Positions 15,041-41,372 of a DNA stretch of 64,000 bases are shown piece by piece. The first letter of the stretch is position 1, and each line of letters begins with the position of its first letter. The position numbers were made by a program, and so were the translations under genes. The notes below the pieces were generated by a model. That model had not been told where the DNA came from, made no database searches, and was given only the letters and a program-made list of their open reading frames with translations. The stretch is from Camelus dromedarius (Eukaryota): positions 19,158,001 through 19,222,000 of the forward strand of contig NC_087451.1 of assembly GCF_036321535.1 (NCBI RefSeq), read 5' to 3'.

Positions 15041-18000
15041 AAAATACAAATTAATGTATAACAGAAAGCAGGTTGGTGGTTGGCAGTTGGCAGAAGACTT
15101 TTGGGAGGGATAGAAATGTTCATTATCTTGATTATGGTTTGTTTTATATGTATGTCAAAACTTAACAAATTGTACACTTTAAATATGTGTACTTCACTAT
15201 ATATCAATTATGCCTCATTAAAGCTTTAAAAAAATTTAGTGGTTTCAAAAAGCTAACATACAGGAACTATTCCTGAGCTTTGCAAGTAGGAACAAAATAT
15301 GAGCTTAGGAGAGAAAACACCAAAAACGTATACTTGTGTCACTCCCACCTCAGAGAACTAGTCAATCATAAACACTACATTGCTGTTTCCTTACGGTGGG
15401 AAAATCTAAAAAATCTCACTCTTGATACAGATCTTGCTATGGAGTCTTACTACTTAGAGCCTTACTACTCCCCAAGGCATTAACACTCCTGCCTGGCCCC
15501 TTCATGCTTTAGCTTTCTCAGCCATTCCCTTCCTCGGAAATGTTTTTCCCACTCTTCATTCAGCTCCATCAATACCCATTCCTACTATTCTCCATTCAAG
15601 TCTTCTGAGGCATCTACTCCCCACTATTTGCCTAAGTCCCTCCTCCCTTTTGGGTTCTTCCCTTAGTTCCTTCCTCCCCTCCTTTTTTTTCTTTAGCTCT
15701 TTTCTCAGTGTCCTCTTCCCCTCCTCCCACAACCACTATCATCTCTCTTGCCTCTTCTTTTCACCCTTTATAAGGGTCTGTCTGAATTTCTATAAACATT
15801 TCAACCAGCCTCTTCAGCTGACTTTATCCAACTCACTATACAAAATGTCTATCTCTAAGCTTTAGAAACAGTTTATCAACAGAGAGTTAGCTATTTTCAA
15901 AACATTTCAGGGATGAAATAAAACACAGTGGAAGACACAGAAGGAGAAAAGAATCACTTGCCTGCCTCTTTGGTGAACAGATTCCCACTCCTAGGTATAT
16001 ATACACATTCACAAAGGATATGCCTAAAGCTCCAATCCAATCCTCCTCCAACGTGTCAAGGTTGGACCTCAGGGAGAGGCAGCAATACTACCTGGTTTTT
16101 CTAGCTACCATGATCCCAAAGCAGAAATTCAAAGCTCAGAATGGAGTTTTCCCTCACATTACTCAGCAGTACAATGAAGCGTCACTCATACTTCTAGGGT
16201 CCTTTTCCTTCAGATTCTCCAAAACAAGCTTTCTCCTCAACTTCATATTCCAATTCAGTCTCTGCTCCTTAATTCCACCCACACCACCCCAGTTTTTTTC
16301 CTCCAAAGATACCAGTGATAGAAAGAGAGCTCCCAGTTCTGCTCAGTCCATGATCATTGGGAAGTTAAGCAGATGAAGGCAAGAGCAGTTGAATAAATCT
16401 CTAGAAAGCTACCTACATCCAAAGGATAACTCGATTCAGTGGCCATGGTATATAGGATTTTGGCTTATAGGGCCTAGGACTGGAGAGAGGAAGAGACAGC
16501 CTTAGTTTCCTAAGTACTTCAGTTTCCTCAAATTACAAGACATAAAATTAGTTCCCACCTTCAACCTATCTTCTAGTCCTGGACTCTCAAAATAAAGGAA
16601 GGAGTTCTAGGAGAAAAGCAGGAAAGGGTCTGGATAAAAACCACATGTTGAAGCTGAGGATGCCATATTCTTTAACAAAAGAACAGGAATTAGGATATCC
16701 AGGTAAGGTCTGGAGAGCTGGATAACTGTGTCCTGGAAGTTGAACAGATACTTCATTTAGGAGAGTACAATTTAAAGAATAAAACACATTAAGTTCTGAC
16801 AGAAAAGAAAGAACTGATGGGATAGCTACAAGATAACTTAGACCCCAGATCTGACATTTGCAGTTCTACCCTGGAAGATCAACAACAGGACCCAATTCTG
16901 AGAGGGATGAAAGGAACCTTCCCAAATTTATAGTTCTGGAAGCAATGTAAACACTCCTTGACCCACACTGAAGTTTGCTGAGTCATGAATATTAAATCAG
17001 TAGCAAGGTCAGATTGGGTAAGTATCTATATGGCACTGAAAGCTGAAGAAAGATTAGTCTGAATTTAAGGACTGATCGTTATTTTCAACTGAGGCATGGG
17101 GCAGAAAATGCTAAAGTGACCAGAACACAAAATCCACATTACCTGGCTTTCAGCTCAACTCCAAATTTTACTCTCTGATTTAAAGCATCCCATCCCCAAT
17201 TCACTCAATCAAGTATATCACTGCCACAGCCCACAGGAGAAAAGGGAAAGATTCAGAGTCTTTGTTAGACACTCATATGTGGAAAGGGAAATTTCCCTTC
17301 CCAGCCGGCGTACACCGTTAATTTGAACTGGATACCAATCTTTCCCAGCTGTGCTTGGCTTCCCTGCTTCCTAGAACAAAAGCAAACATCATATCTTGAT
17401 CTCAGACTCAATTTAAGAATCACTTTTCTTGGGGGTGGGAAGGATCTAGATGAAGGACAAGATACTGTGGGAAATTAGGCTAAACTCTTATGAGGAAAGG
17501 TATTTCAACAAAGGTAATGCAAGTCTGGGGAAAAGGGATTTAAGAGACAAATGTACTCTATCAGAACCAGAAAGGAATTAAAAGAGACTCTGCCAAAGAA
17601 AACAGAAATGCTATGGAGGCAGCTAGAAGAAAAAAGTCTCATGAGTTAGGAAAGTATGCACAAAAAAATGACAGACGGGATCAGCTGGGAGCTTCCTTCT
17701 CCCATCTCAGCTGGGTAATAGAATAAGGCCGTTTCCGGGGATTACACAGGAATACAGAAATATTAGGACAAAAAGGCAAAGACTTAAACTGAGAGGATAA
17801 GATCGATGTGGGTACCCACAGGCACTGAATATAAAGAAATCTGGTGAGGGAAGTAAGGCAGAAATGAATAGGCATTTAGAGTGGGTAAAAAATCACTATA
17901 CTGAATTTATCATTTGAAGCTGGGGCAGAAACCTTCTACTCCAAGGACAAATATGAGACCCTTTCTAGTTACAGTTATAGCAAGATATGCTTCACAGGGA

Positions 18001-36702: not shown

Positions 36703-36842
36703 NNNNNNNNNNNNNNNNNNNNNNNNNNNNNNNNNNNNNNNNNNNNNNNNNNNNNNNNNNNNNNNNNNNNNNNNNNNNNNNNNNNNNNNNNNNNNNNNNN
36801 NNNNNNNNNNNNNNNNNNNNNNNNNNNNNNNNNNNNNNNNNN
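36703..36842 (+). other. ATP1B2: Assembly gap (140 N) inferred to contain the ATP1B2 start codon and coding exon 1 (112 nt)
   Basis: Left flank is the GC-rich end of the 5'UTR. Gap size fits 112 nt plus margins, and MVIQKEKKSCGQ is absent elsewhere. Confidence 0.85.
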
Positions 36843-38634: not shown

Positions 38635-40953
38635 CCTTTATCCTCCTCTTTTACCTCGTCTTCTATGGCTTCCTCACCGCCATGTTCACCCTCACCATGT
38701 GGGTGATGCTGCAGACTGTCTCTGACCATACCCCCAAGTACCAGGACCGACTGGCCACGCCGGGTGAGTGATGCAGCTCCCCCCACCAGCCACTCTATCT
38801 TGTGCCCCCATGCCTCCAAGAGGAACTCACAGGACGAGAACTCACAGTTCTTCTCAGAGGTTTGGTTCTGATGATCCAGTCGCCGTGTGCTGGGAAGTTC
38901 TTCTTGAAGTCTGCCTTCCCATTTCCCACAGCAGAGAGCTATGTGATCTGGGGAGGTGGCAGATGTTCACAGGAGATCTTCCTCCAGTGGAGATGATCTC
39001 AGATCTTCACCCTATCCCTCACCCTGGTTTGTTCATCGTCTTCCCTCTGTGTGTGGTCCCTCGTCTTATATATGCTTCTCACTCTTGCCTTTATTGGCTA
39101 GGCTTGATGATTCGCCCTAAGACTGAGAACCTTGATGTCATTGTCAACGTGAGTGACACTGAAAGCTGGGACCAGCATGTTCAGAAGCTCAACAAGTTCT
39201 TGGAGCGTGAGTGTGGTTCTGATGATATGGCTGTGCAGGACCTCCGGAAGGGAACTGGGGACCCTGGGATCGGAACATTAGGCCCATGACTCTCTCTCCC
39301 CCACCTCCTTAGCTTACAACGACTCCATCCAAGCCCAAAAGAATGACGTCTGCCGCCCTGGGCGCTATTATGAACAACCAGATAACGGAGTCCTCAACTA
39401 CCCAAAACGTGCCTGCCAGTTCAACCGGACCCAGCTGGGCGACTGCTCGGGCATTGGGGACCCCACCCACTATGGTTATAGCACTGGACAGCCCTGTGTC
39501 TTCATCAAGATGAACCGGGTACCCAGGACCTTAGTTCCCAGGGAGAACGGAGGAGGGATCTGGGACCACCATCTGCTGGCAGTTGCTTCCTTTCACTGGG
39601 GCTCATGGGCTTTGGGAGATTTTTAGATGTTTGAGTGGCTGAGAGAACAAGAGAGATGGGGCCATTGATGGCTGAGAGCATGGCTGGAAAGCTGGATACT
39701 TATGTCTTTGACAACTTCTTTCTCTAATCCTCACCACTCTTTCTCCTAACTCCAGGTCATCAACTTCTATGCAGGAGCGAACCAGAGCATGAATGTTACC
39801 TGCATGGGGAAGGTGAGTTTGTTGGGCCTTGTCCACCTGCCCTCCTGTTTGTCCTTCAAGGTTTCCCTGTCATTCACTCATCTCTCCCTATCTCCTTTGC
39901 TCCCAGAGGCCCCATCACCATAGGGACAAGGGGGTAAGAGTGGACTCCAGTATGGCTCCAACTCCAAGGGGCTCCCACCCCTCTTGCTTCTCTCTAGGAT
40001 ACAGAAGCTTGCTCTTTGGTGTGGATAGATACCCCCTTCCTGACTCTACCTACCACCTTCTCGCCCTAACCCTTCCATCTTCTCTATTCCCTGACCATGC
40101 TTTTCCCTCTCCCTCCCATATCTCTCCTGCCCCTCTATTCTTTTTAAGTATCTAGTAGCTGCTGATCTGTAAATGCCACCTGCCACCACTAAGTTGTCCT
40201 TGGAACCCTGGACCCCCACCTCTGTCCTCTCTAGGAACTTTATGCTCCTCTTCAGTCAACCCCCTCTTTCCTTCCTACTGAGTCCTTACTCATTTATCTG
40301 TTCTCTCTTGGCTCTGCTCCAGAAACCGATTCCTGAGGATGGGGTAAGAATTTGGGGTGGGAGGGCAGTAGGAGGCTTCAGGCTCATTAGTGCCCTTCAG
40401 GACTTCCCAGTCCGATGAGAGACGGGACACCCCTCCTGCGCACACGCAAACCCACCCGGACTCAGCTCAGGGGAAACGGATTTGAGACAGACTAATTTGG
40501 GGTGAAGGAAGAACAGAGGACAGTCTGGAGAGCTTCTGGGTTCCTGCCATCCCTAATATGCTCTCCCCCACCCTCCTGCGCCCCCACAGCGAGATGAAGA
40601 TGCCGAGAATCTCGGCAGCTTCGTCATGTTCCCGGCGAACGGCAACATCGACCTCATGTACTTCCCCTACTACGGCAAAAAGTTCCACGTAAGTCCCGTG
40701 GGAGGCGGGGGGCCCCAGGGGAGCGGGGTCCTGGGGAGGAGGCCTCGTTGCCGCGGGTCTGCACCCTCGCTCTCCTCCCCTGGCCCAGGTGAACTACACG
40801 CAGCCCCTCGTGGCCGTGAAGTTCCTGAATGTGACCCCTAACGTGGAGGTGAACGTGGAATGCCGCATCAATGCCGCCAACATCGCCACCGACGACGAGC
40901 GCGACAAGTTCGCAGGGCGCGTGGCCTTCAAACTCCGCATCAACAAAACCTGA
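38635..40953 (+). CDS. ATP1B2: Na,K-ATPase beta-2 subunit (AMOG), exons 2-7
   Basis: Exons 38635-38763, 39102-39206, 39313-39518, 39756-39812, 40590-40688, 40789-40953(TGA); 761 nt plus 112 gives 290 aa. [18 protein letters not shown]...[11 protein letters not shown]. Confidence 0.97.
39907..39933 (+). CDS. ATP1B2: Candidate alternative microexon A of ATP1B2 (27 nt, RPHHHRDKG)
   Basis: Long pyrimidine tract, TGC at 39898-39900, cccAG acceptor, GGG|GTAAGA donor; phase 0-0, no stop. Confidence 0.7.
40323..40343 (+). CDS. ATP1B2: Candidate alternative microexon B of ATP1B2 (21 nt, KPIPEDG)
   Basis: Long pyrimidine tract, TGC at 40315-40317, ccAG acceptor, GGG|GTAAGA donor; phase 0-0, no stop. 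Confidence 0.7.
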
Positions 40954-41318
40954 GACCCCTTCCTCCCGCCCCCACCTCTTTTCCTATGGATGCTTCTGGA
41001 ATGTCCGCTACCTTGCCTGAGCCCTCCCTCACCCACCCCAAAGGTATTTTTTATAACAGAGCTATGGCTTGTCTGAGCCTCGTGCCCCTTTCCTTTACTT
41101 CTGAGTGCATTGTGATTCCCTGGCTACACACATTCTCCACCACCTTCTTCCCATCCTAGCTCAGTCAGAGACAGGGAGACAAGACCCCAAGATGGTCACA
41201 GAGGAAGTAGGAGCCTTTCTAGTTCTGGCATAGCAGTGAGTGGGGCATCCTCCCAGCTACCCACCTTCCTGCCCTCTTGTCCTGAGTGAAGGTGCCCACT
41301 CTCCCATCCACCCACCTT

Positions 41319-41320
<2 letters not shown>

Positions 41321-41372
<52 letters not shown>
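41321..41372 (+). repeat. (CA)26 microsatellite in the ATP1B2 3'UTR
   Basis: Counted directly. Confidence 0.97.

What the first reader, a model, noticed from the sequence alone, without database searches (positions are those of the whole stretch)
40290..40395. ATP1B2 microexon B (21 nt) encoding KPIPEDG, a tandem partner of microexon A
Seen: the same architecture as A (pyrimidine tract, UGC at 40315-40317, identical GGG|GTAAGA donor), with UAG motifs downstream (40369-40371, 40388-40390) of the kind Musashi proteins bind. A and B together add 16 aa ([16 protein letters not shown]) and allow four frame-preserving isoforms. Inference: a cell-type-specific splice code for the beta-2 ectodomain.
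Basis: partly seen in the sequence, partly recalled or inferred. Interest (0 to 1): 0.7.

Follow-up and report, generated by a model that had tools for sequence, protein, structure and literature searches.

The report
Known photoreceptor microexon of ATP1B2
This 21-base mini-exon in the camel sodium-pump beta-2 gene is real and strongly conserved, but in mouse and human it is already published as an exon spliced in almost only in rod and cone cells of the eye, so it is an ordinary, known feature.

Summary
At 40323-40343 lies a 21-nt, phase-0, stop-free cassette (KPIPEDG). It has a pyrimidine tract, UGC at 40315-40317, an AG acceptor and a GTAAGA donor. It sits 389 nt downstream of a 27-nt partner (39907-39933, RPHHHRDKG), in the 777-nt ATP1B2 intron between exon VINFYAG...CMGK and exon RDEDAEN.

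It is not chance. In a camel/lemming/titi monkey/mouse alignment, the 30 nt upstream of B are 97% invariant, against 45% for the whole intron. Frame and splice sites are intact in all four.

Annotated proteins of lemming, cats, chinchilla, chimpanzee and a bat carry both inserts.

It is already known. The mouse orthologues (mm10 chr11:69601924-69601944 and 69602304-69602330) are photoreceptor-specific:
- Murphy 2016: B has PSI about 0.8 in wild-type retina and about 0 in photoreceptor-less retina.
- ASCOT 2020: PSI is 95.5 in rods and below 3 in every other tissue or cell type listed.
- ASCOT 2020: Msi1 knockdown abolishes inclusion.
- Ling 2022: a photoreceptor-specific ATP1B2 exon drives a photoreceptor-specific AAV switch; the held text does not say which exon.

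What the 16-aa insert does to the protein remains unstudied in the literature I could search.

The parts
39756..39812 (+). ATP1B2 constitutive exon ([19 protein letters not shown], 57 nt), ends in phase 0; donor GTGAGT at 39813
   Evidence: Orthologous to mouse mm10 chr11:69602425-69602481.
39907..39933 (+). Microexon A, 27 nt, RPHHHRDKG; UGC at -9 from the acceptor; donor GTAAGAGTG
   Evidence: 74% invariant in 4 species. Present in annotated proteins P0017, P0028, P0035, P0040, P0054, P0055 and P0056. The mouse orthologue has PSI about 0.84 versus 0.17 in wild-type versus Aipl1-/- retina, and falls in the Msi1/2 double knockout.
39981..40005 (+). Conserved CU-rich block with an invariant UAG (CTCTTGCTTCTCTCTAGGATACAGA) downstream of A; candidate PTBP/Musashi element
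   Evidence: 72% invariant window; alignment. The function is inferred.
40215..40239 (+). Second conserved ...CTCTCTAGGAA block between A and B
   Evidence: 68% invariant window. The function is inferred.
40293..40322 (+). Upstream intronic element of B: TTTATCTG, a CU tract (TTCTCTCTT), GGCTCTGCTCCAG with UGC at 40315-40317 and the AG acceptor at 40321-40322
   Evidence: 96.7% invariant across camel, lemming, titi monkey and mouse. It contains the most conserved window of the intron.
40323..40343 (+). Microexon B, 21 nt, KPIPEDG, phase 0-0
   Evidence: Orthologues: mouse RLIPKDG, lemming RPIPKDG, titi KLIPEDG. Annotated in proteins of felids (KPIAETG), lemming, chinchilla, chimpanzee and the bat Artibeus. 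The mouse orthologue mm10 chr11:69601924-69601944 has PSI 0.83/0.35/0.83/0.82 in wild-type retina and 0/0.03/0/0.01 in Aipl1-/- retina.
40344..40363 (+). Donor of B (GTAAGAATTTGGGG) and proximal downstream intron
   Evidence: GTAAGAA and the GGGG run are invariant in 4 species; 59% invariant over 20 nt.
40369..40390 (+).
   Evidence: Present. Not enriched over composition, and only loosely conserved in position.
40590..40688 (+). ATP1B2 constitutive exon ([18 protein letters not shown]...KKFH, 99 nt), starts in phase 0
   Evidence: Orthologous to mouse mm10 chr11:69601525-69601623.

Best explanation
40323-40343 is the camelid orthologue of the known photoreceptor-specific 21-nt microexon of ATP1B2 (Na,K-ATPase beta-2 / AMOG). 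With the 27-nt microexon A upstream, it is spliced in as a pair in rods and cones and skipped in glia, neurons and other tissues.

Proposed regulation:
- Outside photoreceptors the tiny exon is not defined. The conserved CU-rich tract upstream probably binds PTBP1.
- In photoreceptors PTBP1 is low and Musashi is very high. Musashi binding to intronic UAGs near the exons promotes inclusion.
- SRRM3 may also act, on the invariant UGC 8 nt before the acceptor.

Product: a beta-2 subunit with 16 extra residues (RPHHHRDKG+KPIPEDG) between K203 and R204, three residues after Cys200 of the C200-C261 disulfide. The insert forms a flexible, charged loop on the ectodomain.

Shown here: the sequence, the conservation, orthology to the mouse exons, and presence in annotated proteins of other mammals.
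Shown in the literature, in mouse and human: photoreceptor specificity and Msi1 dependence.
Inferred: inclusion in camel retina, direct factor binding at B, and any effect on the protein.
For: Sequence and frame.

Conservation: a four-species intron alignment shows B's upstream 30 nt 96.7% invariant, against 45% overall, with splice sites and frame intact.

Annotated isoforms carrying A+B exactly between ...C.GK and RDEDAEN: lemming P0035, felids P0040, chinchilla P0054, chimpanzee P0055 and bat P0056.

Orthology to the published exons: the mouse intron layout 94/27/359/21/300 nt equals the mm10 coordinates in the Murphy 2016 S3 table.

Specificity: B has PSI about 0.8 in wild-type retina and about 0 in Aipl1-/- retina. 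The ASCOT A+B unit has PSI 95.5 in rods, 0.5 in brain and 0 in astrocytes. ASCOT reports the rod-specific splicing as shared between mouse and human. A photoreceptor-specific ATP1B2 exon drives the photoreceptor-restricted SLED.RAB reporter; the held text does not say which exon.

Regulation: Msi1 shRNA abolishes Atp1b2 rod splicing. Msi1/2 double knockout lowers exon A from about 0.45 to about 0.21. ASCOT finds CU/UC repeats upstream of, and UAG enrichment downstream of, rod-specific exons in general.

Loop: in an AF2 model of the insert-bearing ectodomain, pLDDT is below 50 at model residues 142-156, against an insert at 140-155.
Against: The UAG count downstream of B is no higher than composition predicts.

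The held knockout tables show Musashi dependence for exon A and for the A+B unit, not for B alone.

No held paper tests SRRM3/4 on this exon.

The low pLDDT of the insert partly reflects how few aligned sequences contain it.
Confidence: 0.92

Rival explanations
1. B is mainly an SRRM3/SRRM4 (eMIC-domain) dependent microexon. The UGC just upstream of the acceptor is the key enhancer and Musashi plays only a supporting role.
For: UGC lies at -8 from the acceptor of B and -9 from that of A, and is invariant in four species within the most conserved block of the intron. The gar 27-nt exon and the first turtle microexon also carry a UGC about 9-10 nt before the AG. From established knowledge, SRRM3 drives retina-enriched microexons (Ciampi 2022, PMC9303857, title and abstract seen).
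Against: ATP1B2 does not occur in the main text of the SRRM3 paper, and its supplements are not held. Msi1 shRNA alone abolishes the Atp1b2 rod splicing. ASCOT shows essentially no inclusion in SRRM4-expressing neurons (PSI 0-0.2), so an SRRM4-type signal alone is not sufficient.
Confidence: 0.3
2. In camelids the block is kept only as an intronic regulatory element, or the exon is no longer used, so the camel protein never carries KPIPEDG.
Against: The open frame, AG acceptor, GTAAGA donor and upstream element are all intact and nearly identical to species where the exon is used or annotated. Substitutions within B across species keep the length and frame and give related peptides, [KR]-[PL]-[IV]-[PA]-[EK]-[DT]-G.
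Confidence: 0.04
3. It is a chance AG...GT-flanked open triplet run in an intron, with no biological role.
For: Short in-frame segments with splice-like edges are common in introns.
Against: It sits in the most conserved block of the intron, is annotated in five other mammalian lineages, and its mouse orthologue has measured photoreceptor-specific inclusion.
Confidence: 0.01

Closest known systems
Mouse/human Atp1b2 rod-photoreceptor-specific exons (Murphy et al. 2016 PLoS Genet, PMC4991804; Ling et al. 2020 ASCOT, PMC6952364; Ling et al. 2022 SLED.RAB, PMC9526712)
   Same: The intron is the same. Exon lengths (27 + 21 nt) and phase are the same. The splice-site sequences and the 30-nt element upstream of B are nearly identical. 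The spacing is the same: 94 nt from exon 5 to A in both camel and mouse.
   Different: Only the species and a few codons differ (camel KPIPEDG versus mouse RLIPKDG). Inclusion in camel retina has not been measured.
Musashi-dependent photoreceptor microexons (Ttc8 exon 2A, Cep290, Cc2d2a, Cacna2d4, Prom1)
   Same: A tiny frame-preserving cassette, high flanking-intron conservation, photoreceptor-restricted inclusion, and loss on Msi1 knockdown (mouse).
   Different: Here two microexons sit in tandem in one short intron and behave as one unit. They encode an extracellular loop of an ion-pump subunit rather than a ciliary or cytoplasmic protein. In the library searched I found no knockout of these exons reported.
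SRRM3/SRRM4 (eMIC) neuronal and retinal microexon programme
   Same: Length of 27 nt or less, a UGC close to the 3' splice site preceded by a CU-rich tract, and strong intronic conservation.
   Different: The exon is not included in SRRM4-expressing neurons (ASCOT PSI about 0). SRRM3 dependence is untested in the material available.
Alternative inserts at the same site in other vertebrate atp1b2 genes (gar, teleost and catfish RYKVGKDEW; shark 8 aa; lizards 10 aa; softshell turtle 8+8 aa)
   Same: The insertion point after ...C-x-x-K is identical. The gar exon is 27 nt, starts AGG, ends GG|GTAAGA and has a UGC about 10 nt before the AG, like exon A. The turtle has two microexons, the first 95 nt after exon 5.
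   Different: The peptide sequences are not alignable with B. Sequence-level homology of B outside placental mammals could not be shown, because cross-control alignments scored as high as the orthologous pair.

Membership tests
Orthologue of the published mouse Atp1b2 21-nt photoreceptor exon (mm10 chr11:69601924-69601944) | Aligns base-for-base to that exon, in the same intron and at the same spacing | tested here: met
   The alignment places the exon between exon 5 and exon 6. The mouse layout of 94/27/359/21/300 nt computed from L003 equals the coordinates in the Murphy S3 table.
Orthologue of the published mouse Atp1b2 21-nt photoreceptor exon (mm10 chr11:69601924-69601944) | Intact AG acceptor, GT donor, open frame, length a multiple of 3 | tested here: met
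Photoreceptor-specific, Musashi-dependent microexons | Included in photoreceptors and skipped elsewhere, in this organism | not testable with these tools
Specificity is shown only for mouse and human in the literature.
Photoreceptor-specific, Musashi-dependent microexons | UAG motifs enriched in the proximal downstream intron | tested here: inconclusive
   There are 2 TAG in 200 nt downstream of B in camel, against about 3 expected from composition. One TAG around +22 to +29 recurs in 4 species. Better-conserved UAG blocks lie between A and B.
Photoreceptor-specific, Musashi-dependent microexons | Loss of inclusion when Musashi is removed | not testable with these tools
   Literature only. Msi1 shRNA abolishes Atp1b2 rod splicing. 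Exon A drops in the Msi1/2 double knockout. No separate row for B appears in the held, truncated tables.
SRRM3/4 (eMIC)-dependent microexons | UGC within about 20 nt upstream of the 3' splice site, after a CU-rich tract | tested here: met
   UGC at -8 (40315-40317), invariant in 4 species. The CU tract TTCTCTCTT lies upstream.
SRRM3/4 (eMIC)-dependent microexons | Inclusion depends on SRRM3 or SRRM4 | not tested
   No data in the held papers. The absence of inclusion in neurons argues that SRRM4 alone is not sufficient.

The most novel reading that the evidence does not exclude
The 16-residue photoreceptor insert lies between the two sequence segments (VTCA 198-201 and NFVMFPANG 213-221) that Ploessl et al. 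2019 place in the predicted membrane-distal 'patch I' of ATP1B2. It could therefore retune what the beta-2 ectodomain binds in photoreceptors: retinoschisin anchoring, trans-adhesion, or Kv2.1/Kv8.2 partners. The one retinoschisin-binding study I read in full (Ploessl 2019) numbers residues as in the 290-aa form and never mentions splicing. Alternative inserts at exactly this site occur from sharks to mammals, so this would be an ancient, tunable loop. B would be the later-added second module in amniotes or mammals.
Probability: 0.2. Interest if true: 0.5.

Novelty: already known. Interest (0 to 1): 0.15.

Why it matters
As a discovery it adds little. The exon pair has been published since 2016 and has even been exploited as a photoreceptor-specific gene-therapy switch.

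What this check adds:
- The pair, with its regulatory flank, is intact in a camelid.
- The flank upstream of B is the most constrained part of the intron across boreoeutherian mammals.
- The same insertion point carries annotated alternative microexons in reptiles, bony fishes and sharks.

The practical point is that about 95% of rod ATP1B2 mRNA encodes the +16-aa protein. The retinoschisin binding-site study I read works with residue numbering of the 290-aa form and does not mention splicing.

Tried and rejected
Later queries used window:38768-39286, parts of database proteins starting at residue 65 or 120, or ids of database proteins of other species. Scripts read the window only from 38651 on.
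2. The look-up of encoding contigs gave nothing for the felid isoforms P0040 and P0028, the cetacean P0013 and the bat P0052, because only the longest product is on record. It gave no DNA for wallaby because the file was too large. No laurasiatherian genome other than camel, and no marsupial genome, could therefore be aligned.
3. The Dromiciops 'ATP1B2-like' hit is an intronless retrocopy and is uninformative for the intron.
4. Supplements of Ciampi 2022 (SRRM3) are not held. Friedrich 2011, which ASCOT cites as an earlier report on Atp1b2, is not held, so I could not see what it showed.
5. Sequence homology of B with the second turtle microexon, and of A with B (a possible tandem duplication): local alignments scored z = 5.2 and z = 2.2. 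Cross-controls between non-orthologous pairs scored z = 2.8-4.4, so CU-rich composition explains most of the signal and neither claim is made.
7. The PDB holds no close beta-2 structure. Beta-3 and beta-1 chains align on both sides, and the alignment breaks exactly at the insert.

Full report
**What is in the sequence.** The window carries ATP1B2 on the + strand.
- The exon encoding [19 protein letters not shown] occupies 39756-39812 and ends in phase 0.
- The next constitutive exon ([11 protein letters not shown]...KKFH) occupies 40590-40688 and starts in phase 0.
- The intron between them is 777 nt.
- Candidate microexon A is at 39907-39933: 27 nt, RPHHHRDKG, acceptor ...TTTGCTCCCAG, donor GTAAGAGTG.
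- Candidate microexon B is at 40323-40343: 21 nt, KPIPEDG, acceptor ...TTCTCTCTTGGCTCTGCTCCAG, donor GTAAGAATT.

**Is it more than chance?** I obtained the orthologous genes of Norway lemming (L001), coppery titi monkey (L002) and mouse (L003) through proteins found with an exon-3 query. I then aligned the four introns (coordinates corrected).

| Region | Invariant columns |
|---|---|
| Whole intron | 45% |
| 30 nt upstream of B (40293-40322) | 96.7% |
| Exon B | 76% |
| Exon A | 74% |
| Best 25-nt window of the intron (40299-40323) | 96% |

Acceptor, donor, length and frame of both exons are intact in all four species. The peptides are:
- Mouse: A = RPQHYRDKG, B = RLIPKDG.
- Titi monkey: B = KLIPEDG.
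- Lemming: B = RPIPKDG.

This pattern, an ultra-conserved upstream flank and a tiny frame-preserving exon, is what regulated microexons look like.

**Annotated proteins.** Database proteins carry the inserts precisely between ...C.GK and RDEDAEN.
- Both A and B: lemming P0035 (306 aa), felid isoform X4 P0040 (RPRHSRDKG+KPIAETG), chinchilla P0054 and chimpanzee 'ATP1B2 isoform 2' P0055 (RPHHHRNKG+KLIPEDG).
- A plus an extended form of B, made from an upstream acceptor: bat Artibeus P0056.
- A alone: felid X2 P0028 and titi monkey P0017.

**It is already published.** The Murphy et al. 2016 S3 table compares wild-type mouse retina with Aipl1-/- retina, which has lost its photoreceptors (PMC4991804). 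It lists two Atp1b2 cassette exons on chr11 minus strand (mm10).

| Exon (rMATS 0-based start) | Length | Inclusion, wild type | Inclusion, Aipl1-/- |
|---|---|---|---|
| 69601923-69601944 | 21 nt | 0.825 / 0.345 / 0.83 / 0.824 | 0 / 0.028 / 0 / 0.014 |
| 69602303-69602330 | 27 nt | about 0.84 | about 0.17 |

The flanking exons are 69601524-69601623 and 69602424-69602481. The implied layout of 94/27/359/21/300 nt equals what I measured in the mouse locus. These are therefore the orthologues of B and A.

Further published data:
- ASCOT (Ling et al. 2020, PMC6952364) lists the combined unit chr11:69601924-69602330. PSI is 95.5 in P28 rods, 0.5 in brain, 0 in astrocytes and below 3 in every other tissue or cell type listed.
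- ASCOT counts it among 31 rod-specific events shared between mouse and human, and marks it as previously reported.
- In the photoreceptor Msi1/Msi2 double knockout, exon A falls from 0.40-0.47 to 0.17-0.24 (PMC9509328).
- Ling et al. [quoted passage not shown] This AAV splicing switch is on in rods and cones and off in other retinal cells, HEK293, HepG2 and N2a. The held text does not say which of the two exons the construct contains.

**How it most likely works.**

Shown, in mouse: the pair is nearly constitutive in photoreceptors and skipped elsewhere, and Musashi is required.

Inferred, for camel and for the cis-elements:
- The invariant CU tract upstream of B fits PTBP1 repression outside photoreceptors. 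[quoted passage not shown]
- The invariant UGC at -8 (and -9 for A) fits an SRRM3/4-type enhancer. The exon is silent in SRRM4-positive neurons, however, so that signal cannot suffice.
- Better-conserved UAG-containing blocks lie between A and B, at 39981-40005 and 40215-40239.

**Protein consequence.**
- The 16 residues enter after K203, three residues past Cys200.
- An AF2 model of the insert-bearing lemming ectodomain has pLDDT below 50 over model residues 142-156. The insert is 140-155, between a strand and a short helix. This suggests a flexible surface loop. The shallow coverage of the insert in the alignment also lowers confidence there.
- Ploessl et al. 2019 (PMC6497308) assign residues 198-201 and 213-221, which flank the site, to a predicted membrane-distal 'patch I'.
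- Their retinoschisin-binding work never mentions splicing.
- No beta-2 structure close to the mammalian protein is in the PDB.

**Wider evolution, noted in passing.** Annotated alternative isoforms with inserts at the same point exist in several lineages:
- Gar, several teleosts and catfish: 9 aa, RYKVGKDEW-like.
- A shark: 8 aa.
- Lizards: 10 aa.
- A softshell turtle: 16 aa.

The gar exon is 27 nt, starts AGG, ends TGG|GTAAGA and has a UGC about 10 nt before the AG. The turtle insert comes from two 24-nt microexons, the first 95 nt after exon 5 and the second 305 nt before exon 6. Sequence homology of B beyond placentals could not be demonstrated, because control alignments scored similarly.

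**Limits.**
I have no camelid RNA evidence.
- The SRRM3 supplements and Friedrich 2011 are not held.

**Verdict.** It is already known, so interest is low.

Noticed in passing
window 36703-36842: A 140-nt N run sits where ATP1B2 exon 1 should be; the MVIQKEK start was not found in the window.
   Followed up: no
window 39981-40005, 40150-40175 and 40215-40239: Three conserved blocks lie between microexons A and B. Two are near-repeats of CTCTCTAGGA (CU tract plus UAG) and one is TCTAGTAGCTGCTGATC. They are better conserved than the UAGs downstream of B and are candidate PTBP/Musashi elements or decoy 3' splice sites.
   Followed up: partly
window 40173-40415: The frame of B is open for 81 codons, including 50 codons upstream of the exon. 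The bat Artibeus isoform X2 (P0056) uses an upstream acceptor and adds about 30 such residues (…[20 protein letters not shown]), so an extended form of B has been annotated at least once.
   Followed up: partly
L008 (spotted gar) about 16912-16938; L007 (softshell turtle) intron between INFFAG...CAAK and KEEDAQ: Alternative microexons occur at exactly the same protein position in gar, teleosts, catfish, shark, lizards and turtle. The gar 27-nt exon resembles exon A at its ends (AGG..., ...GG|GTAAGA, UGC upstream). The turtle has two 24-nt exons.
   Followed up: partly
L006 (Dromiciops gliroides) 301-924: An intronless ATP1B2-like retrocopy (207 aa, no microexon insert) lies on the opposite strand inside a gene for a 5206-aa protein with laminin-G, EGF and fn3 domains (usherin-like).
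   Followed up: no
P0018 (horse), P0022 (Weddell seal): These database proteins read through from exon 5 or from exon A into the intron (retained-intron models). In horse, the 5'-most intron segment is open and in frame with A.
   Followed up: no
window about 41290-41345: A (GT)n/(CA)n microsatellite lies in the ATP1B2 3' UTR. It was seen only as CVCVCV and HTHTHT runs in ORF translations.
   Followed up: no
window 39870-39885 and 40286-40296: A shared motif TYACTCAT sits about 30-40 nt upstream of the acceptors of both A and B (and of the second turtle microexon), resembling a strong branch point. It is not conserved in rodents upstream of B, where TTTATC is the invariant candidate.
   Followed up: partly
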